The notes: generated by a model from the sequence alone, not told the origin. A stretch of DNA of 64,000 nucleotides from Octopus sinensis (GCF_006345805.1 NW_021832837.1:1-64000), one strand, 5' to 3'; numbered from the stretch's first letter, positions 32,412-59,002 are shown. Program-made: numbers and translations.

Positions 32412-32491
32412 TCCAAATATATTGTCAAAATTGAATGTTGCATCTTCATTTCGTCATAATATTTAATAATATGAGTCATAGTATTTGGAGT

Positions 32492-33757
32492 GGATCAAAC
32501 TCTGTCCGAAAAAACCTCGAATCTCATATCTTTGTCCAGTAAGCTCACGACAATTGATTCCCATGCGGCTTTATTTCTATTGAAGAATTGCTTCGCGATC
32601 CCCAAGCTAATGTTCACCCTCCGAAGTGCCCCCTGTTTTACAAATCACGTGGGCCTCTTCAGCTTCGACCGTGCCCTCAGGGCATGCCTCGAAGCAATTT
32701 GTAATGCCCCGTTTGATGACCTCGGCTGGGAGCAGGCAATCCTCCCGGTTAGCCACGGTGGCATCGGTGTGCGCTCTGCCGCCGATCTTTCCCTGCCAGC
32801 ATTTCTTTTCTCTGTTCACGCCACCAGCTCTCTGGTCCACGAGATTCTCCAATCCGCTATTGAATCTCCCGTGGACACTGAGTTCTCTTCGGCTGTCAGA
32901 TGCTGGTCCGCTAATGGTCTCAAAGTTCCTGATGATTCGACCAAACAGCGGCAGTGGGACGGAATTTATTCGGACCACAAGTTTTTCCTCCCCAAGTGTA
33001 AACTTGATCAACACCGCCTGGGCTGCCTGCTTGCTGGGTCCCAAAAGTATTCAGGAGCCTGGCTGACAGCTATCCCAATGGTATCAGTCGGGACATTACT
33101 GGATAACGAATGCCTCCGCATCGCAGTCTCTCTGCGCTTGGGATTAAACATCTGCCGTGAACATCAATGCCGCTGCGGCCAGATGATTGACACCCTAGGA
33201 CTGCACCCGCTATCCTGCCGGCGTAGCGCTGGACGTTTCCCTCGACACTCTGGGCTTAATGATGTGGTGAGCCGCGCCCTGGCATCTGCGGGATTCCCTA
33301 ATGTGCTGGAACCAGTCGGGTTGGATCGCGGAGATGGAAAGCGCCCAGATGGCATGACAACATTTCCCTTCGATCACGGGAAATGCCTCATCTGGGACGC
33401 GACATGCTCCGACACATTCTCCCCGCATAACCTGATTTCATCAGTTGCTGAGCCCGGCTCAGCGGCAAGACATGCGGAGGTCACAAAAACAAGAAAATAC
33501 TCGTACCTGGCCAGAAACCACATTTTTGCGCCAGTAGCCGTGGAGACATCCGGGGTCATCGGCCCAGAATCGCTTTCTTTCCTTCGTCGGCTGGGGTTGA
33601 AGATTGCCAGACGAAACAAAGATCCCAACGAGACTCGTCATCTTTTCCAAAGAGTCTCGTTGGCGATCGTCCGAGGGAACTGCCAGGCCATCTTATGCGC
33701 CGGCAGTTCAAAATAACTGCATTGTCTAATGTCTTTATTGTCGTATAAATTAGTTTC
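32492..33757 (+). mobile_element. CRE-like RLE retrotransposon, 5'-truncated (copy B), open ORF of ~408 aa
   Basis: ORF 32490-33716 has the RT thumb (LPVSHGGIGVR), CCHC-like CRCG..LHPLSC..RH and RLE motif KRPDG..WDATCSDT..KTRKY; 11-bp TSD GTATTTGGAGT (32481-32491, 33758-33768). Confidence 0.93.
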
Positions 33758-39287: not shown

Positions 39288-39601
39288 AACAAAATAGAGA
39301 ATGCGGTTATATTTAAAAAATTTATTATTTAATTAAAATAAAATCAAGTATTACATTTTTAATAATTTGATTTAAGATTAGCATAATAGTGTTAAAAAAG
39401 TCTCACTCAAAAACTAAGTTGTTTTTATGAAATCATATTAGAAAAGTCGTTCAACATGCCATTCTTTGTTTATCTTGCGACTAGGAAATTTTCATGACTT
39501 GAGTGTGTCCATTAGTACGAACAGAGACTCCGTTATGCGACGAGGATTGTCTTAATTAGCCTCTAACTCGAGTTTTCATTGTAGGCTATACAGTGATATT
39601 A

Positions 39602-39687
39602 TGTGACATGGTTTGCGCGATACCTATGGCCCGCGCGATACCTGACGTGACCTTGAAATGTACAATTATGACATTGATGGGATTAAA

Positions 39688-39719
<32 letters not shown>

Positions 39720-41314
39720 AGTAAAAATGGAACTGTAAAACATTTTCAGGACTTCATTATCGAATTGAGGAGGTGGTAATTTACTAAATTAGCTAAAGAC
39801 TCTCTCATTTTGACAAAAAATTATATTTGTAGGAATTTAATTATCAGAAATTAATTTTTTTGGTGGAAAACCTAAATTCTTGAGTTATTTCTAGCGTGCA
39901 AGTATATTTTGCAGCAATGTCCTCGTACAAAGGTTATGTAAAGAATAGTTTGGAATATCAAATTTTAAAAGATGTTTTACAGGATAAATTTCCTGAACAT
40001 CTTACAAAGCAAAAAAATATAGACTAGTTAAGAAAATTGAAAATTTTACTGTAATTAATGAAAGGTATCATACAAATTGTAAATGTATAGATTGTATCTT
40101 AAATGTGCGAATTCAGATCACAAGCTAGTGATTTGTCTAGACAATGAACCCGAAATGGAGATCGTTGCTAAAAGTTTGCATGACTTCTTGCATGGAGGAG
40201 TTAACAAAATTGAATATGAATGTCGACAACGATATTTCACAGTTAAAAATGAGATTATTAGAAAAGTCATTCGAAACTGTGAAATTTGTAAATTTGCGCG
40301 ACCCTTAAAAGTTTTAACTTTTTTAAATCCTAGATTGGAGATATAAATAACCATGTCTTTGCATCTAGCCCAAATGAAAGATTTCAGATAGATCTTATAG
40401 ATCTGAAAAGTTTTTCTACCATAAATAAAAATTTTAATGGATTTTAACGGCATTGACGTATATAGCAGGTTAGTTTTTTTAACAATTTTTATAGATTTGC
40501 ATTTGCGAGGCCGCTCTACACTAAGTCCTCAAATGAAGTTTGTGAAAACCTTATTTTTCTTAAATGGTCCGTGTCAATTTCTTCAGTCCGATAATGGGAC
40601 TGAATTCAAGAATCGTGAAATGACCAATCTATGTGAGGAATTCAATATCAAACGAATTCACGGAAGGCCAAACAATCCCCGCTCACAAGGGATTGTCGAA
40701 CGCTTCAACCAGTCAATTACAAGAAAAATGGCAAAAATGATCGACAATGATAATAAAAAGTGGCTGGAAAAATTAGAAAATGCAGTGTACAGTTATAACA
40801 TTTCTGTCCACTCATCTTCTAATGAGAGCCCTTTTGAAAGATACCGGGGAATAAGTGGAATAAATACAATATTTTATGGTTGTAATTATAAAATTATTCC
40901 TTAGATAATTCAGGTAATGATTTGTTGAGTCCTGATCAAGTCGATGATGCAAACAATTGTCCGAGTCCAATTGAAAATTCATGTAATTTGAATTTCTATA
41001 TGTAGATGATTGTAATTATTCGTTTACAAGTCCGAAAAGATTGCGACTGAATAAGTTTGAATCTCCATATTATCCATCTGCAGAAATTATCAGTATTTTA
41101 TCAAACAATCGCGTTGAGGTAGTTTAAACATTCAAATTTAATAGATAAAAAATTCGATGAGCGAAATTTCGATTGTGCCAATGTCCAGACTTAAAAAATT
41201 AACAAGTTATTATTCTTTGAAGTTTAATATTAATTACAATATTGACATTAAGTTAAGCTGCAAGGTCACGTCAGGTATCGCGCGGCCCATAGGTATCACG
41301 CAAACCATGTCACA
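39602..41314 (+). mobile_element. Ginger/TDD-type DNA transposon with intron-containing retroviral-like integrase gene (39917-41127, several frameshifts)
   Basis: ~55-bp TIRs TGTGACATGGTTTGCG..TGACGTGACCTTG; 5-bp TSD TATTA; H2C2 finger (HDFLHGG..CEIC); rve core QIDLID, QSDNGTEF and SQGIVERFNQ; no LTR, gag or RT. Confidence 0.9.
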
Positions 41315-42078
41315 TATTATGAAAATTCTCAACAATGACTCTCCTTATTATGACGAACTGAAGTTTTTACGTGACGACTCCTTTAATTGTATTAACCGCC
41401 GGTTTTTTAAAAAACAAGTACGGAGTTTGTGAGCATTCTAACTGACAAAAGAAAATGGCCGGTTTATTTATAAATTTCTACAAAATAGATTCATGAATTT
41501 TATTTTTAAAATAAGTTTTTATCATTGAGTCAATCAATGAAAGCATACATTTAAATATAATCTTATACTTTTCTTAATTAGAGATTTCCCAAATGATTTA
41601 TTTTGGTATTTGTTGGGAGATTAAGGCCCAAATAAACGGTATCCTGAGGTTAGCTTAAATTAGTCTTGATATTTACTTCCGCGACAACTTAAATAACATC
41701 AAAATTAACATTTAAAAAATTCTATGAGAATAAATACGTTTTTGATGTATCAAATTTAGAAGAGACATTAAATAAATTTCTTGTAATAAAATAAGATTGT
41801 CCCCAACCTACAGCGGTTTTAAAAATATCCATACTCCACAACTGCAATTGTTTTGTCAAAATAATTTTGAAACCCATGGAATATTAATTTGAAGAACAAG
41901 AGAATGTAAAAAGAAAATAAACCATACAGCGTAATGAATATCTTATTTTCTAGTTAATTATAATAATTTCCAGGTCAATGTAGAATGTGAATAATTTTAG
42001 ATTTCATTTGGGTCTATTTTTTAAATAGTTTTTGTGCTATAGTTTTCTCAACAAGGTTAACCAGACAACAGTTTTATA

Positions 42079-44132
42079 TCTTAATAATAAAATGGTTGGT
42101 GTGTGTCTGTCTGTCTGTCTGTCTTGTGTCTGTCGTGTGTCTGTCTGTCTGTCTGTCTGTCTGTGTGTGCACACCAACTTCAAATTGGCAATACGATGTC
42201 CTCGACTTACATGATGAGGTCCTAAAACCTTCCCCCCAAAAAAATAAAAAAAATTTTTCTGCATTTTGGTTAAAATGAACAACTACAATGTCCTCGACTT
42301 ACATGATGTCCTTAAAACCTTCCCCCCAAAAAAAATTAAAAAAAATTTTCTGCATTTTGGTTAAAATGAACAACTACAATGTCCTCGACTTACATGATGA
42401 AGTCCTTAAAACCTTCCCCCCAAAAAATTAAAAAAAAATTTTCTGCATTTTGGTTAAAATGAACAACTACAATGTCCTCGACTTACATGATGAAGTCCTT
42501 AAAACCTTCCCCCCCAAAAAAAAAAAAAAAATTTTCTGCATTTTGGTTAAAATGAACAACTACAATGTCCTCGACTTACATGATGAAGTCCTTAAAACCT
42601 TCCCCCCCAAAAAAATTAAAAAAAAATTTTCTGCATTTTGGTTAAAATGAACAACTACAATGTCCTCGACTTACATGATGAAGTCCTTAAAACCTCCCCC
42701 CCCAAAAAAATTAAAAAAAAATTTTCTGCATTTTGGTTAAAATGAACAACTACAATGTCCTCGACTTACATGATGAAGTCCTTAAAACCTTCCCCCCCAA
42801 AAAAATTAAAAAAAAATTTTCTGCATTTTGGTTAAAATGAACAACTACAATGTCCTCGACTTACATGATGAAGTCCTTAAAACCTTCCCTCCCAAAAAAA
42901 ATTAAAAAAAATTTTCTGCATTTTGGTTAAAATGAACAACTACAATGTCCTCGACTTACATGAAGTCCTTAAAACCTTCCCCCCAAAAATCAAAAAATTA
43001 TTTTCTGCATTTTGATTAAAATGAACAACGCGAATGTCCTCGACATTCATGATGAGGTCCATTAAAACCTTCAAGGCAAAAATCTCACGTATTAAGAATA
43101 TCCTTGATGAAAACGACAGCGAGAATATTAACAATGATGAACTCCCAATTATTCGCGATAAAGAAATTCAATTCATCCTATGTTTTTCTCTTTAAAATTA
43201 AATGCATATATCATTATCGACCATGAATCAAAATTAAAGCTATTATCATATTTGACTTTGACAGAATGTGCAATCACAGATTGCACGACTTTGAATAGAG
43301 TGTGCAATTAACAGATTTTGAAAAACCACTTTGATAGTTGAAACCACATTAGCACAGTCATTAACACAATTTACCACCAATTGACGCACGACCTTGAATA
43401 GAGTGTGCAATTAACAGATTTTGAAAAACACTTTGATAGTTGAAACCACACATTAGCACAACCATAACACAATTTACCACCAATTGACAGCGCAATCAGA
43501 AGAATTTGCGTAAAAATATTAACTATTTACTTGAGTTTTTCGTAAAATAGAATTTATTTTCGGTATGCCTCTTTTCCTAAACTTTTTTATTATTCAAAAA
43601 TAATTTTTTAAATAGATAACCGAAGGAGGAAACGAAGCTGAAGAAAAAACGGTCAGCTTAATAAGGTAATTAATTAAATCTTTTTTGTGTGTCGCTTTCT
43701 TGCCTGCCGCATCTCCCCCTGCCCCATTTCCGCCAGTAATAAACAAAAAAATAAAAAAGAAAAAAAAGGAAATTACAAAGGAAAAATGAAAAAATTAAAT
43801 ATAAAAAAAATAGACCACAAAAAATGAAAAAAAAAGTTTTGCAATGACAATAACAAGGCCCAGGGACAGTCATTAAAGGTAGTTGGGTTATTTTTAGAGA
43901 GTGAGTGCTTTTCACATGGACAGCTTATGTGGGATGCTCGAGGGTAGGCAGAAGAGAAAATTATTCATATATGCCAAGGAAGGACGGACGACAAACATCG
44001 TTTATCAACAGGCGATAGAAAAGGGTACATTAAACCAGGTAGTTTTATACATCTACATAAACTTATAGTTTTTGATGAAACAGGCCCTCCGCAGGAGCTA
44101 GGTCGCGGTGAGCGAGCGAGCTGCCGAGCTAG
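42079..44132 (+). mobile_element. Non-autonomous Helitron with (GTCT)n microsatellite, ~93-bp satellite and a ~103-bp internal duplication
   Basis: A|TC 5' end at 42078/79 (TCTTAATAATAAAATGG); 3' GC hairpin TCGCGGTGAGCGA followed by CTAG|T at 44129-44133; no TSD. The 3' end recurs at 50657. Confidence 0.85.
42194..43075 (+). repeat. Tandem array of ~10 units of 91-96 bp inside the Helitron
   Basis: tgtcctcgacttacatgatgaagtccttaaaaccttccccc..ttttctgcattttggttaaaatgaacaactac recurs 10 times; length variation is mostly in C and A homopolymers. Confidence 0.97.
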
Positions 44133-53825: not shown

Positions 53826-54550
53826 TTTTTTTTCATTTAATTTACACACAACAACAAAGTTAAGAAACATATTCGAGTGAAAAGGTAGAATTATGTTTAT
53901 GGTGGATATGTAGCCTGGCGGATTGCCAAACTGTTTCCGCGGATAATGGCGATCGAGAGCCGTTGCATTAGCCAGTTCGCCTCCCGAGGATCATGGGTGC
54001 GCATTGAGATTTTGGCTCCGAGCTTGCGAAGGAACTTTTCAGTTTTTGGACCGAGAGCACCCGACGTCTCAGCCGCGATCGGCACCACGGAAAACTTCTC
54101 CGAGAGGGCAGAATATTTTAAAAGCTTTAAATCTTCAGCCTTCTTAGCTGCAGATTTGGCCTCCAGGGCACACGAAGTTAAGTGAGAAGCAGAAAAGGTG
54201 TCGCAGCAGGTTGCGTCCCAAACGAGGCCTTTTCCGCCTTCGAAGGGGAAAAGGGTCATCCCGTCAGGACGTTTCCCGTCGCCGCGGTCAAGGCCCGGTG
54301 GTTCGAGAACCGAAGGAAATCCCGCCGAGTCGAGGGCCCTCCGTATGATGTCGTTCATGGCAGAGTGCCTCGGGAAACGTCCGGCACTCCTCCTGCACGA
54401 TAAAGGGTGCAGACCGAAAGGGTCAACAGTGCAGCCACAGCGGCACGTGTGCGAAACACATTGCCTTAGTCCGAGTCGCAGAGAGACTCCGATCCTTACC
54501 GCTTCATCGTCAAGGAGAGTGCCAGATGGGGCGTTCGGGAATGCACAAAG
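53826..54550 (-). mobile_element. CRE-like RLE retrotransposon 3' fragment (copy D)
   Basis: [30 protein letters not shown] and LMQRLSIAIIRGN; 11-bp TSD CCTCTTTAACT (53815-53825, 54551-54561); short A-tail. Confidence 0.9.
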
Positions 54551-56041: not shown

Positions 56042-56340
56042 TATCAAATTTGGATTCACTCTGATAACTTCTGGCGGTAAAATAAAACCACAATGTGTCC
56101 TATTTTATGAGGTTTTGGGGTCTACTTTACTTAAGCTGAGTAAGTTAAAAAGGCATCTGGAATCCAAATATCCTAGTTCAATACACAAGGATCTTGATTT
56201 TTTTAATTTAAAGCCACAAATTGAACAATTTCAGATTTGATCAATCTGGAATTTGGTCCAAAAATAATTCATCGGGCTTGAAAACCTCTTATCGAATCAG
56301 TATGAAAATTGCTTCTAAAAAGAAATCCCACAATCAAAGA
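56042..56340 (+). pseudogene. hAT (Buster/ZBED8-like) transposase N-terminal fragment
   Basis: YIKFGF..KPQCVL..EVL..LSKLKRHLESKYP resembles the Buster-type BED finger. Confidence 0.7.
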
Positions 56341-56552
56341 AAACGGTTGGCATTTTAGAATGAAAAAAAACACTAAACGTTTTCCTCAAGATTTCGAACA
56401 AATGCTGAGAACAGAACTTACGAAGATATGGAGAGTTACCTGAAGAATGGTTTTCGGATCATTGGGGCTGGTTAAAACTTCACCGGACTATCCATCCGAG
56501 TCTGTGTGTTTCAGAGAAAACGGGAAAATGTGAATTCTATAATGATGTATTA

Positions 56553-58408
56553 TGTCACATGGGTGATCAGACCCCTATGGGCAACCTGGCCTTTACGTGT
56601 TTCCACGGCAACTACATAGCAAATATTTACTAAAAGGCCAACTAAAATAAAGGCAATCGATCCGAACTAATGATTGAACTTTAAATTTTTGAGAAAATGA
56701 TGTTTTATATTTGAACCATGCTTGCTTTAAAATAATAAAATTCTTTACAACATAGCAAATTATAACGTGAATTATTTTTATTTTTGATAATATAAATTGC
56801 AACATTAGCAAATTATAATTTACATCAAATTTTTTGCAAGTTTGTAACAACTTTAACTCTAACTTTAACCCAAACCCTAACGTTGGCAAGTGACAACATA
56901 AATATTCAAAATCTAACCCTAACCTTAATCCAAACCCTAACGTTGGCAAGTGACAACATAATATTCAAAATCTAACCCTAACCTTAATCCAAACCCTAAC
57001 GTTGGCAAGTGACAACATAAATATTCAAAATCTAAACCCTAACCTAATCCAAACCCTAACGTTGGCAAGTGACAACATAAATATTCAAAATCTAACCCTA
57101 ACCTTATCCAAACCCTAACGTTGCAAGTGACAACATAAATATTCAAAATCTAACCCTAACCTTAATCCAAACCCTAACGTTGGCAAGTGACAACATAAAT
57201 ATTCAAAATCTAACCCTAACCTTAATCCAAACCCTAACGTTGGCAAGTGACACATAAATATTCAAAATCTAACCCTAACCTTAATCCAAACCCTAACGTT
57301 GGCAAGTGACAACATAAATATTCAAAATCTAACCCTAACCTTAATCCAAACCCTAACGTTGGCAAGTGACAACATAAATATCAAAATCTAACCCTAACCT
57401 TAATCCAAACCCTAACGTTGGCAAGTGACAACATAAATGTTCAAAATCTAACCCTAACCTTAACCCAAACCTAACGTTGGCAAGTGACAACATAAATATT
57501 CAAAATCTACCCTAACCTTAATCCAAACCCTAACGTTGCAAGTGACAACATAAATATTCAAAATCTAACCCTAACCTTAATCCAAACCCTAACGTTGGCA
57601 AGTGACAACATAATGTTCAAAATCTAAACCCTAACCTTAACCCAACCCTAACGTTGGCAAGTGACAACATAAATATTCAAAATCTAACCCTAACCTTAAT
57701 CCAAACCCTAACGTTGCAAGTGACAACATAAATATTCAAAATCTAACCCTAACCTTAATCCAAACCCTAACGTGGCAAGTGACAACATAAATATTCAAAA
57801 TCTAACCCTAACCTTAATCCAAACCCTAACGTTGGCAAGTGACAACATAAATATTCAAAATCTAACCCTAACCTTAATCCAACCCTAACGTTGGCAAGTG
57901 ACAACATAAATGTTCAAAATCTAAACCCTAACCTTAACCCAAACCCTAACGTTGGCAAGTGCCAACATAAATATTCAAAATCTAACCCTGACCTTAACCC
58001 AAACCCTAACTCGAAATTAAATGATGTTTCTGCTGACGATTCTTCAGACATTTTTTACAAAAATTGGAAGCCTTTTTGGCCAACCGGTGTTTGCTTCGAG
58101 CTTCATATCCTCCGGGAATATCCCGATTAACGCTTCCTTAATTTGATTGTATTCGTTAATATTTCTGACGTAACCCTTAAACCCAGACATCACAAAGTGT
58201 GAGTAACCACGCTGTTAAAATTAATATACTTTTGGGTAAGCCATTTTTAAAAGATAATTCAAATGTAATTTTAAATTAGAATAATTGATTAATCTACACT
58301 CTTCCATATATAAATTGCTATATTCAATATTTAATACCTTTTCTGCGGTTTCCATAGAAACACGTAAAAGGACTGGCTGCCCATAGCGACATAGTCGCCC
58401 ATGTGACA
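56553..58408 (-). mobile_element. Non-autonomous Ginger/TDD derivative carrying a satellite array
   Basis: Imperfect ~60-bp TIRs starting TGTCACATGGG; TSD TATTA (56548-56552, 58409-58413). Minus-strand ATG at 58190 gives MSGFKGYVRNINEYNQIKEALIGIFPEDM.., homologous to MSSYKGYVKNSLEYQILKDVLQDKFPEHL.. at 39917. Confidence 0.88.
56852..58012. repeat. 60-bp satellite, 19 units, half of each unit made of degenerate TAACCC hexamers
   Basis: Unit ccctaacgttggcaagtgacaacataaatattcaaaatctaaccctaaccttaatccaaa; the core gcaagtg occurs 19 times. Confidence 0.97.
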
Positions 58409-59002
58409 TATTATCAGTTTTAAAAAACGTTGAAGAAGGCGACAACAAAAAATTTGTGAATAATTTATTTAATTATCTACTCTAATCTGAAATTGAGGAA
58501 ACTCAAAATTAGATTTTGATAATTCCAATTTTTTTAGTTTCTTCAGCTTACTTGCTTTTCTCCCTTCGTCTTATAAAAGAGTCTACAAGCAATTTAAAAT
58601 ATCTTGCAGGCTAAGTTTAGGCTTGTAAGCAAATCATCTTATACATGAAAAAAATACGGTAATTTTTATTTTAGAACTCACACACTAATGTGGATTGATT
58701 TAAAAAAAATAATAATAGGAAAATTTAGAGACTGCTCATTTATTACTAAATATTTTGACTTAGTCGGGGTGTAGCCTTTAAAAAATGTCATTAACTGTAT
58801 CAGACATTCGTCATTGTGTTAAGATGACAATATACAAAACAATTTTTTCATTTTTATTTTTAAAAAATAAGGTGAGTTTATCAATTTATTTTGGATTGGT
58901 AAAATTTATTTGAGAATAAAATTATTTTGATATATATTAATTGTAGAAAAATAATCAAACTGATTAAATATAATAATAGATTTTTTGACGAAAAACAAGA
59001 TT

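What the first reader, a model, noticed from the sequence alone, without database searches (positions are those of the whole stretch)
56553..58408. Ginger derivative whose integrase is replaced by a telomere-like 60-bp satellite
Both TIRs, the TSD and the first ~45 codons of the transposase survive, but the integrase core is gone. In its place are 19 homogeneous 60-bp units, each containing TAACCC TAACCT TAATCC AAACCC TAACGT plus a 30-bp unique half. This is a cut-and-paste vehicle able to scatter interstitial TTAGGG-like arrays. The arrays could bind telomere-repeat proteins, seed telomere healing, or be precursors of subtelomeric or centromeric satellite (all inference). I know of no description of this Ginger-plus-telomeric-satellite combination, but I cannot search the literature here.
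Basis: partly seen in the sequence, partly recalled or inferred. Interest (0 to 1): 0.8.

Follow-up and report, generated by a model that had tools for sequence, protein, structure and literature searches.

The report
Broken octopus transposon carrying telomere-like repeats
A 1.86-kb defective Ginger2-type cut-and-paste transposon in the Octopus sinensis genome has lost its integrase gene and instead carries about 19.5 copies of a 60-bp repeat, half of which looks like degenerate telomere sequence. This is a neat new example of a known kind of element, with no evidence yet of any telomere-related role.

Summary
At 56553-58408 there is an element with ~60-bp imperfect terminal inverted repeats (TGTCACATGGG...), a 5-bp target duplication (TATTA) and a 1,157-bp array of 19 full units plus one 28-bp partial unit of 60 bp. 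Substitutions in the array are 0.9%; 1-nt indels are 1.5%. Half of each unit matches (TAACCC)5 at 25/30 positions.

The "Ginger" call is supported and can be sharpened to Ginger2/TDD. A decayed, full-length integrase-encoding relative lies in the same window (39602-41314). It shares the TIR block architecture and the same TATTA duplication. Its N-terminus is homologous to the 48/49-codon ORF left in the finding (E=4e-9; hhalign 91%). Related 420-460-aa integrase-only transposases occur in Dictyocoela, again with TGT termini and a TATTA duplication, and in a canonical Ginger2 element of a wasp.

Not supported by any data here: dispersal of the array by transposition, telomere-protein binding, telomere seeding or satellite seeding. 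Only one copy is visible, and no tool reaches the rest of the octopus genome.

Non-autonomous DNA transposons with internal tandem arrays are well documented, especially in molluscs. I therefore rate this a new member of a known kind, of modest interest.

The parts
56548..56552 (.). Left copy of the 5-bp target-site duplication, TATTA
   Evidence: Direct reading. The same pentamer flanks relative E2 and the Dictyocoela relative.
56553..56632 (-). 3' terminal inverted repeat relative to the remnant ORF. Clear over about 60 bp and weaker out to about 80 bp. Terminus is TGTCA (TGTNR).
   Evidence: the repeat finder I1+I2; arm alignment 46/61; shared blocks TGTsACATGG / CTATGGsC / ACGTG with the E2 arms.
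56633..56853 (-). AT-rich 3' non-coding internal segment
   Evidence: No ORF with family similarity. No significant similarity to the monomer.
56854..58010 (-). Array of 19 full units plus one 28-bp partial unit of a 60-bp repeat. Layout is T-(U-T)19, where T is the telomere-like 28-30 bp and U is the unique ~30-32 bp. The G-rich (TTAGGG-like) strand runs in the sense direction of the remnant ORF.
58011..58043 (-). 33-bp unique spacer between the ORF stop and the array (deletion/replacement junction)
58044..58193 (-). Remnant of the transposase N-terminus: 48 codons from the ATG at 58190, or 49 from the GTG, then a stop
   Evidence: BLASTP against the E2 N-terminus, E=4e-9; hhalign against the family N-terminal profile, 91%; the ATG lies 219 nt from the element end, compared with 316 nt in E2 and about 207 nt in L004.
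58194..58327 (-). 5' untranslated internal segment
   Evidence: Position between TIR and ATG.
58328..58408 (-). 5' terminal inverted repeat, terminus TGTCA
58409..58413 (.). Right copy of the target-site duplication, TATTA
39602..41314 (+). E2: a related, full-length but decayed compact Ginger2/TDD-like element. It has ~91-bp TIRs and an N-terminal domain, H2C2 finger and rve core broken by stops and frameshifts. TATTA flanks lie at 39597-39601 and 41315-41319. It serves as the reference that identifies the finding's family.

Best explanation

It keeps what an integrase-type transposase supplied in trans would need: both TIRs with TGTCA termini and the conserved subterminal blocks. It also keeps the 5' leader with the first ~45 codons, and the 3' non-coding tail. 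It inserted into a TATTA site, duplicating 5 bp.

The roughly 1.1-1.2 kb that should encode the H2C2 finger and DDE core is replaced by a 1,157-bp array of a 60-bp unit. The element is therefore about the same length as autonomous relatives.

Inferred: the array is passive cargo. It most likely grew in place from a small seed in which two short degenerate TTAGGG tracts flanked a ~30-bp unique piece (T-U-T), through unequal exchange or replication slippage. Ongoing homogenisation spread the TAATCC variant through the middle and left older TAACCC variants at both edges. I infer no cellular function.

Shown: anatomy, family assignment, TSD and array homogeneity. Inferred: trans-mobilisation, in-situ origin of the array and lack of function.
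For: Structure.

Family assignment:
- TIR block pattern: a pattern written from these four arms (so not an independent test) matches only them; 0 matches expected by chance.
- E1 versus E2 arm similarity is reached by only 0-2 of 500 shuffles.
- The N-terminal ORF is homologous to the E2 and family N-termini and starts at residue 1.
- E2 encodes H2C2 + rve.
- E2 matches 420-460-aa integrase-only proteins over 98% of its length. It also matches a KRBA2-like protein (E=3.6e-20) that sits in a TIR element with TGTTA termini and a TATA TSD, the canonical Ginger2 signature.
- The Dictyocoela relative has 213-bp TIRs, a TGTCG terminus and TATTA flanks.
- Literature gives Ginger2 as TGTNR termini, TIRs of 45-297 bp (Table 2, incl. 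TDD-4/5), 4- or 5-bp TSD and AT-rich targets (PMC2836005; PMC10045372).

Loss of the core.

In-situ growth: the array starts and ends in the telomere-like half. Both edge units and units 10/11, 13/14 and 18/19 carry the TAACCC/ATGTTC variant. Substitution divergence is only 0.9%.

Non-coding: the remnant ORF stops before the array and is in another frame. No array-encoded protein exists in a 15-billion-protein collection. There is no Rfam match.
Against: - Only one copy is seen, so mobility of this particular derivative is inferred from one intact TSD.
- No autonomous partner with matching TIRs was found. E2 is a different, decayed subfamily with no blastn-level DNA similarity.
- The two TIR arms are only ~77% identical.
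- The flanks of the array show no significant similarity to the monomer. Nothing in the element documents the proposed T-U-T seed, and capture of a pre-existing satellite is not excluded.
- A TA (2-bp) duplication with an extended target preference cannot be formally excluded from three elements.
- Many of the 1-nt indels may be long-read errors. This guess rests on my memory of how the assembly was made.
Confidence: 0.65

Rival explanations
1. Captured host satellite. The 60-bp repeat is a pre-existing octopus (sub)telomere-associated or ITS-associated satellite. A stretch of it was copied into the element as filler during abortive gap repair after excision (template switching), or by recombination. 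On this view the transposon is a recipient of the repeat, not its source.
For: Degenerate telomere tracts interspersed in subtelomeric satellites are common (PMC5615363). The array boundaries are sharp and the flanks are unrelated to the monomer. Internal deletion with filler DNA is the usual way non-autonomous cut-and-paste elements arise (established knowledge).
Against: No other occurrence of the monomer was found in the 64-kb window. None was found in protein-space searches that would detect its two open frames or in the metagenome and viral collections. None of these searches covers octopus DNA properly, so this is weak evidence. Both array ends fall in the same half of the unit, which fits in-situ amplification slightly better.
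Confidence: 0.25
2. Functional telomere-related element. The element disperses TTAGGG-like arrays that bind TRF/POT1-like proteins, seed telomere healing, or found subtelomeric or centromeric satellites.
For: Each unit holds two perfect TTAGGG hexamers, one of them in a TTAGGGTTA context. The cephalopod telomere motif is TTAGGG. The G-rich strand orientation at the junction (…TTTCGA|GTTAGGG…) is the orientation expected if telomerase had extended a broken end. That last point is my inference.
Against: There is no evidence of more than one copy, of location near a chromosome end, or of any protein binding. The telomere-like part is degenerate (25/30) and interrupted every 30 bp. Nothing in the sequence requires a function.
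Confidence: 0.05
3. Nested insertion. The array belongs to a different mobile element (for example a Helentron-type or other tandem-repeat-bearing non-autonomous element) that inserted into a Ginger2 copy, followed by deletion of the coding region.
For: Satellite-like arrays carried by Helentron non-autonomous elements are widespread in a mollusc (PMC7492417). The window is packed with nested TEs.
Against: No second pair of termini, hairpin or TSD is visible around the array. The inverted-repeat search of the region finds only the outer TIRs and chance AT-rich pairs. The segments between the TIRs and the array sit where the family's 5' leader, N-terminus and 3' tail should be.
Confidence: 0.04
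4. Not a real element. Either chance inverted repeats flank a simple tandem array, or the array is an assembly artefact (collapse or expansion).
For: The TIR arms are only ~77% identical. The contig comes from a draft assembly, and 1-nt indels are frequent in the array.
Against: The arm similarity beats all 500 shuffles. The TGTNR termini, the same TATTA duplication as two relatives, the shared TIR blocks and a correctly placed, correctly oriented homologous N-terminal ORF are together far beyond chance.
Confidence: 0.01

Closest known systems
Ginger2/TDD DNA transposons (Bao, Kapitonov & Jurka 2010, PMC2836005), including non-autonomous Ginger2-1N1_NV
   Same: TGTNR…YNACA termini, TIRs tens to hundreds of bp long, a 4-5-bp TSD in AT-rich targets, and a transposase with an H2C2 finger plus a DDE/rve core. 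Short non-autonomous derivatives are already listed for the group.
   Different: This clade is very compact (~1.7-1.8 kb; proteins of 420-460 aa). It uses a 5-bp TATTA duplication, whereas other metazoan Ginger2 elements use 4-bp TATA. TDD-4/5 also make 5 bp. The derivative carries a large internal tandem array, which that paper does not describe for Ginger.
Tandem-repeat-containing MITEs of bivalves (DTC84 of Donax trunculus, pearl-type elements of oysters; PMC3879986)
   Same: A non-coding element with inverted repeats and a TSD acts as a 'cassette' around a central array of satellite-like repeats. Ordered repeat variants occur within the array. The host is a mollusc.
   Different: DTC84 has up to five core repeats, a microsatellite tail, short inverted repeats and an AA duplication, and its superfamily is unassigned. 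Here there are 19.5 units in a 1.86-kb element, the superfamily is clear, and a piece of the transposase gene remains.
Helentron non-autonomous elements carrying satDNA-like arrays in Crassostrea gigas (PMC7492417), and the Tetris foldback/TIR element of Drosophila virilis (PMC4079207)
   Same: Mobile elements carry internal tandem repeats, which gives a route for dispersing and seeding satellite DNA.
   Different: The transposition machinery differs (rolling-circle Helentron; foldback). Telomere-like content is not a feature highlighted in the abstracts I saw; I did not read those papers in full.
Subtelomeric satellites and heterochromatic interstitial telomeric sequences containing degenerate telomere tracts (review PMC5615363)
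   Same: Short degenerate TTAGGG-type tracts are embedded at regular intervals in a longer satellite unit.
   Different: Those are host chromosomal arrays at chromosome ends or centromeres. This array is bounded by transposon TIRs and a TSD in an interstitial, TE-rich, gene-bearing contig.

Membership tests
Ginger2/TDD superfamily | Termini follow TGTNR … YNACA | tested here: met
   E1 has TGTCA…TGACA. Relatives: E2 TGTGA, L004 TGTCG, L006 TGTTA. Definition from PMC2836005.
Ginger2/TDD superfamily | Terminal inverted repeats of about 45-300 bp | tested here: met
   E1 about 60-80 bp; E2 91 bp; L004 213 bp; L006 233 bp.
Ginger2/TDD superfamily | 4- or 5-bp target-site duplication in an AT-rich target | tested here: met
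   TATTA is present on both sides of E1, E2 and L004. Ginger2 TSD is given as 4 or 5 bp in PMC10045372 and the target as RTATAY in PMC2836005. A 2-bp TA duplication within a longer preferred target is not formally excluded.
Ginger2/TDD superfamily | Encodes an integrase-like transposase with an H2C2 zinc finger and DDE core, and no RT or RNase H | tested here: not met
   E1 itself keeps only about 28-45 N-terminal codons, so it is non-autonomous. The feature is met by its relatives: E2 and proteins P0001-P0012.
Ginger2/TDD superfamily | The transposase groups with Ginger2 rather than Ginger1, Gypsy or GingerRoot | tested here: inconclusive
   The E2 protein hits a KRBA2-like protein (E=3.6e-20) that lies in an element with the canonical Ginger2 signature. 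KRBA2 derives from Ginger2 according to the abstract of PMC3575427. No phylogeny was built, and no Repbase Ginger2 sequences were available.
Ginger2/TDD superfamily | Transposase lacks the YPYY and GPY/F motifs of Ginger1 and Gypsy integrases | not tested
   I did not search the family alignment A1 for these motifs.
Ginger1 | 4-bp TSD CCGG or CCGT | tested here: not met
   The flanks are TATTA. Definition from PMC2836005.
GingerRoot / IS3EU | 6-bp (6-8 bp) GC-rich TSD and TA…TA termini | tested here: not met
   The TSD is 5 bp and AT-only, and the termini are TG…CA. Definition from PMC6839031.
Tandem-repeat-containing non-autonomous TIR elements (TR-MITE-like) | Non-coding element with TIRs and a TSD enclosing a central tandem array | tested here: met
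Tandem-repeat-containing non-autonomous TIR elements (TR-MITE-like) | Many dispersed copies with a variable number of repeats | not testable with these tools
   No octopus genome is searchable at the DNA level. All indirect routes came back empty.
Tandem-repeat-containing non-autonomous TIR elements (TR-MITE-like) | Miniature size (typically under ~800 bp) | tested here: not met
   The element is 1,856 bp. It is better called a non-autonomous element than a MITE.
Interstitial telomeric sequence (ITS) | Uninterrupted head-to-tail run of exact or near-exact telomere hexamers | tested here: not met
   There are five degenerate hexamers (25/30) per unit, separated by 30 bp of unrelated sequence. 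The best match to (TTAGGG)3 has 2 mismatches.

The most novel reading that the evidence does not exclude
This is one copy of an active or recently active family of Ginger2 non-autonomous elements that all carry the 60-bp telomere-like array. The family would then be the origin and the vehicle of a dispersed TTAGGG-like satellite in octopods. The seed tract could have been laid down by telomerase at a break inside the transposon during failed gap repair, since the G-strand orientation at the junction fits that. Such arrays could recruit telomere-repeat proteins or serve as sites of chromosome healing or rearrangement.
Probability: 0.1. Interest if true: 0.65.

Novelty: new member of a known kind. 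Interest (0 to 1): 0.3.

Why it matters
If other copies exist, this would be a clean case in which the superfamily, the parent gene remnant and the cargo satellite are all identifiable. That would make it a good system for studying how DNA transposons generate and spread satellite DNA in cephalopod genomes, which are very repeat-rich and heavily rearranged. It would also allow a test of whether transposon-borne telomere-like tracts matter for chromosome evolution.

As it stands, it is a well-characterised single insertion. Its main practical value is for repeat annotation of octopus genomes. A side result is the recognition of a compact Ginger2 clade with a TATTA-specific 5-bp duplication, shared by an octopus and microsporidia. 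In the microsporidia these transposases are annotated as 'Gag-Pol polyprotein'.

Tried and rejected
1. Other copies in the window: none for the TIR, the unique parts or the monomer.

2. Homologues of the 49-aa ORF in the 5.8-billion-protein index: none. Its homology only became visible through E2.

3. Mapping the array through its two open reading frames. A synthetic repeat-peptide query gave nothing. An exhaustive HMMER search with the junction ORF gave one spurious low-complexity hit, P0024.

4. Exact-protein look-ups of element ORFs to reach other octopus contigs: not on record. An attempt to extend along the contig also failed.

5. Scans of metagenome and viral contigs for the monomer and for the family TIR pattern: 0 hits.

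6. Is the monomer derived from the sequence flanking the array? Local alignments were no better than shuffles.

7. Is the unique half derived from the parent's coding sequence? Its best DNA matches in E2 and in the Dictyocoela element both fall on the homologous (I/L)EY(E/L)C codons of the zinc finger, in frame. The scores are within the shuffle range (103/200 and 6/200), so I keep this only as a weak lead.

8. Direct DNA similarity between E1 and E2 outside the TIR blocks: none.

9. Known RNA family in the region: none.

10. Ginger1, GingerRoot and IS481EU assignments were rejected on TSD and termini.

11. Coding role for the array: rejected. It is out of frame with the remnant ORF, which stops first, and broken by indels.

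Full report
**Source.** An exact-protein look-up of a window ORF places the window at bases 1-64000 of contig VCDQ01013049.1 (98,298 bp) of NCBI assembly GCA_006345805.1. Papers identify that assembly as Octopus sinensis. The window is AT-rich (about 27-45% G+C in 2-kb windows, mostly 28-37%). It is crowded with transposable-element debris and PDZ-domain exons.

**Observation.**
- Tandem Repeats Finder reports one array at 56854-58010, period 59/60, 19.5 copies, 95% matches.
- Cutting it by hand gives 19 full units (58-61 bp) and a final 28-bp partial unit.
- Against the consensus TAACCCTAACCTTAATCCAAACCCTAACGTTGGCAAGTGACAACATAAATATTCAAAATC there are only 10 substitutions (0.9%) and 17 one-base indels (1.5%) in 1,140 positions.
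- Most indels are in short homopolymer runs. They may be long-read errors, but that guess rests on my memory of how the assembly was made.
- The first 30 bp of the unit match (TAACCC)5 at 25/30.
- A variant with TAACCC in place of TAATCC, linked to ATGTTC in the preceding unit, occurs at units 10/11, 13/14 and 18/19. The TAACCC form is also present at both edge units, where the match to the telomere repeat is 26/28.
- All 46 window matches to (TTAGGG)3 with up to 3 mismatches lie in the array, against 0.03 expected.
- TTAGGG is the only experimentally determined cephalopod telomere motif (Adachi 2014, cited in PMC13218726 and PMC6160780).
- The array both begins and ends in the telomere-like half, giving the layout T-(U-T)19.

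**Element boundaries.**
- Inverted arms lie at 56553-~56612(-56632) and ~58349(58328)-58408. They are 46/61 identical, with no shuffle of 500 as good.
- The outer 11 bp, TGTCACATGGG, are identical. Further conserved blocks are CTATGGGCA and TTTACGTGTTTC.
- Immediately outside the arms, TATTA is directly repeated (56548-52 and 58409-13; chance about 0.0017).

**Family.** The window contains a second element, E2, at 39602-41314.
- It has ~91-bp TIRs, termini TGTGACATGG, and the same TATTA on both sides.
- Between its TIRs lies a decayed ORF with an H2C2 zinc finger and an rve integrase core.
- E1 and E2 have no blastn-level similarity. Their four arms share the architecture TGTsACATGG-N12-CTATGGsC-N12/13-ACGTG. 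That pattern, which I derived from those arms, matches only them in the window. Cross-element arm alignments are reached by 0-2 of 500 shuffles.
- The 49-aa ORF of E1 (58044-58193, minus strand) aligns from its first Met with the N-terminus of the E2 reading frame (15/34 identical, E=4e-9).

A composite E2 protein retrieves 420-460-aa integrase-only proteins over 98% of its length.
- Hits include 42-43% identity to 'Gag-Pol polyprotein' entries of the microsporidia Dictyocoela roeselum and D. muelleri, plus Logan contigs of 1.5-2.1 kb.
- Their N-termini share M-S-x-KG-x-VK-x-x-x-EY-x-x-I/L-x-x-L with E1.
- A profile of six N-termini, without E1, matches E1 residues 1-28 with 91% probability (E=9e-7). 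Weaker similarity (KRLPIFV versus RKLKILL) extends to about codon 45.
- The ATG lies 219 nt from the E1 terminus, 316 nt in E2 and about 207 nt in the Dictyocoela element.
- The D. muelleri element (L004) has 213-bp TIRs 98% identical, a TGTCG terminus and again TATTA on both sides.

A more distant hit, 'KRAB-A domain-containing protein 2-like' of the wasp Leptopilina heterotoma (E=3.6e-20), lies in a 2.7-kb element. That element has 233-bp TIRs, TGTTA termini and a TATA duplication in an A-TATA-C context. This is exactly the Ginger2 signature of Bao et al. 2010: TGTNR termini, 4-bp TSD, RTATAY target.

Ginger2 TSDs are given as 4 or 5 bp, with 5 bp in TDD-4/5. Ginger1 (CCGG TSD), GingerRoot (6-bp GC-rich TSD, TA termini) and IS481EU (discrete TSD lengths of ~4, ~15 or ~25 bp; reported only from parabasalids) do not fit. 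E1 is thus a Ginger2/TDD-type element. It belongs to a compact clade that duplicates TATTA. E1's flanks read TAATA in ORF orientation, so the target looks like TAWTA.

**What is missing.** E1 has no Pfam domain. tblastn with 23 family proteins finds nothing significant in it beyond the N-terminal stub.
- The remnant ORF ends in a stop 33 bp before the array.
- The array's open frame (DFEYLCCHLPTLGFGLRLGL) is in a different frame and is broken by indels.
- The array (1,157 bp) is about as long as the coding sequence it replaces. The element (1,856 bp) is close in size to E2 (1,713 bp) and the Dictyocoela element (~1.8 kb).

**Origin of the array.**
- The sequences flanking the array are not related to the monomer.
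- The unique half has its best DNA matches in E2 and L004 at the homologous (I/L)EY(E/L)C codons, in frame. The scores are not significant, so I record this only as a lead.
- The T-(U-T)n layout, the older-looking variants at both edges and the very low substitution divergence fit in-situ amplification from a T-U-T seed by unequal exchange, followed by homogenisation.
- They do not exclude capture of a piece of a pre-existing telomere-associated satellite. Degenerate telomere tracts in subtelomeric satellites are common.
- In ORF orientation the junction reads …TTTCGA|GTTAGGGTTTGGG…. This is the orientation expected if a broken end had been extended by telomerase. That is inference only.

**What could not be done.** None of the collections open to DNA search holds octopus genomes.
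- Scans for the monomer and the TIR pattern in metagenome and viral contigs found nothing.
- Attempts to find other arrays through their translated open frames found nothing real.
- Exact-protein look-ups of element ORFs were not on record.
- Copy number, association of the monomer with TIRs, and chromosomal position therefore remain unknown.
- The absence of array-derived ORFs from a 15-billion-protein collection is weak evidence that the repeat is not a major satellite in assemblies represented there.

**Comparison with what is known.** Non-autonomous elements with internal satellite-like arrays are an established class:
- DTC84 and pearl-type TR-MITEs of bivalves (PMC3879986);
- Helentron-N elements of the Pacific oyster (PMC7492417);
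- Tetris of Drosophila virilis (PMC4079207), and reviews of these.

My literature searches did not turn up a Ginger2 derivative with such an array, nor a TIR element whose cargo repeat is half telomere-like. The searches were keyword-based and Repbase was not available.

**Verdict.** This is a correctly observed and largely correctly classified element, and a new member of a known kind. The functional ideas are untested. Interest is modest unless a genome-wide survey shows a family of such elements.

Noticed in passing
window 39597-41319: E2 is a full-length but decayed compact Ginger2/TDD-like element (1,713 bp, ~91-bp TIRs, N-terminal domain + H2C2 + rve broken by stops and frameshifts) flanked by TATTA. 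It is the key to classifying the finding.
   Followed up: yes
L004 4768-6560 (Dictyocoela muelleri SDVU01000034.1); proteins P0001, P0002, P0004, P0008: Microsporidian proteins annotated 'Gag-Pol/Gag-Pro-Pol polyprotein' are 260-460-aa integrase-only transposases. At least one of them (P0002) lies in a ~1.8-kb TIR element (213-bp TIRs, TGTCG termini, TATTA duplication). It is therefore a Ginger2-type DNA transposon, not a retroelement. These proteins are 42-43% identical to the octopus copy, and the clade spans an octopus and parasites of crustaceans.
   Followed up: partly
L006 3491-6225 (Leptopilina heterotoma JABAIE010000284.1): The 'KRAB-A domain-containing protein 2-like' gene model P0012 sits inside a 2.7-kb element with 233-bp TIRs (97%), TGTTA termini and a TATA duplication. 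This is a canonical Ginger2 transposon annotated as a host gene.
   Followed up: partly
window 56060-56340 (+): The element is inserted in a decayed hAT/GTF2IRD2-like BED-finger coding fragment (…KPQCVLFYEVLGSTLLKLSKLKRHLESKYPSSIHKDLDFF…), so this is a transposon nested in an older transposon. I recognised the fragment by eye and did not search it.
   Followed up: no
window 42192-43072 and 43283-43488: About 0.9 kb downstream of E2 there is another tandem array (95-bp unit, 9.4 copies, 93% matches). It is preceded by a (TGTC)n microsatellite at 42100-42169 and followed by a 103-bp duplication. Its origin was not examined.
   Followed up: no
window 56884-56913 and equivalent positions in each unit; E2 608-622; L004 element 470-485: Read in the ORF direction, the unique half of the monomer translates to DFEYLCCHLPT. 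Its best DNA matches in two family members fall on the homologous (I/L)EY(E/L)C zinc-finger codons. The matches are not significant by shuffling, but they could hint that the unit was built from parental coding sequence.
   Followed up: partly
window 32490-33716 (+) and 53897-54358 (-): Two related ORFs (408 and 153 aa; shared motif …[22 protein letters not shown]…) have no Pfam hit. The first lies in a locally GC-rich (45%) stretch. They are probably the C-terminal part of a retroelement protein family. I did not investigate them.
   Followed up: no
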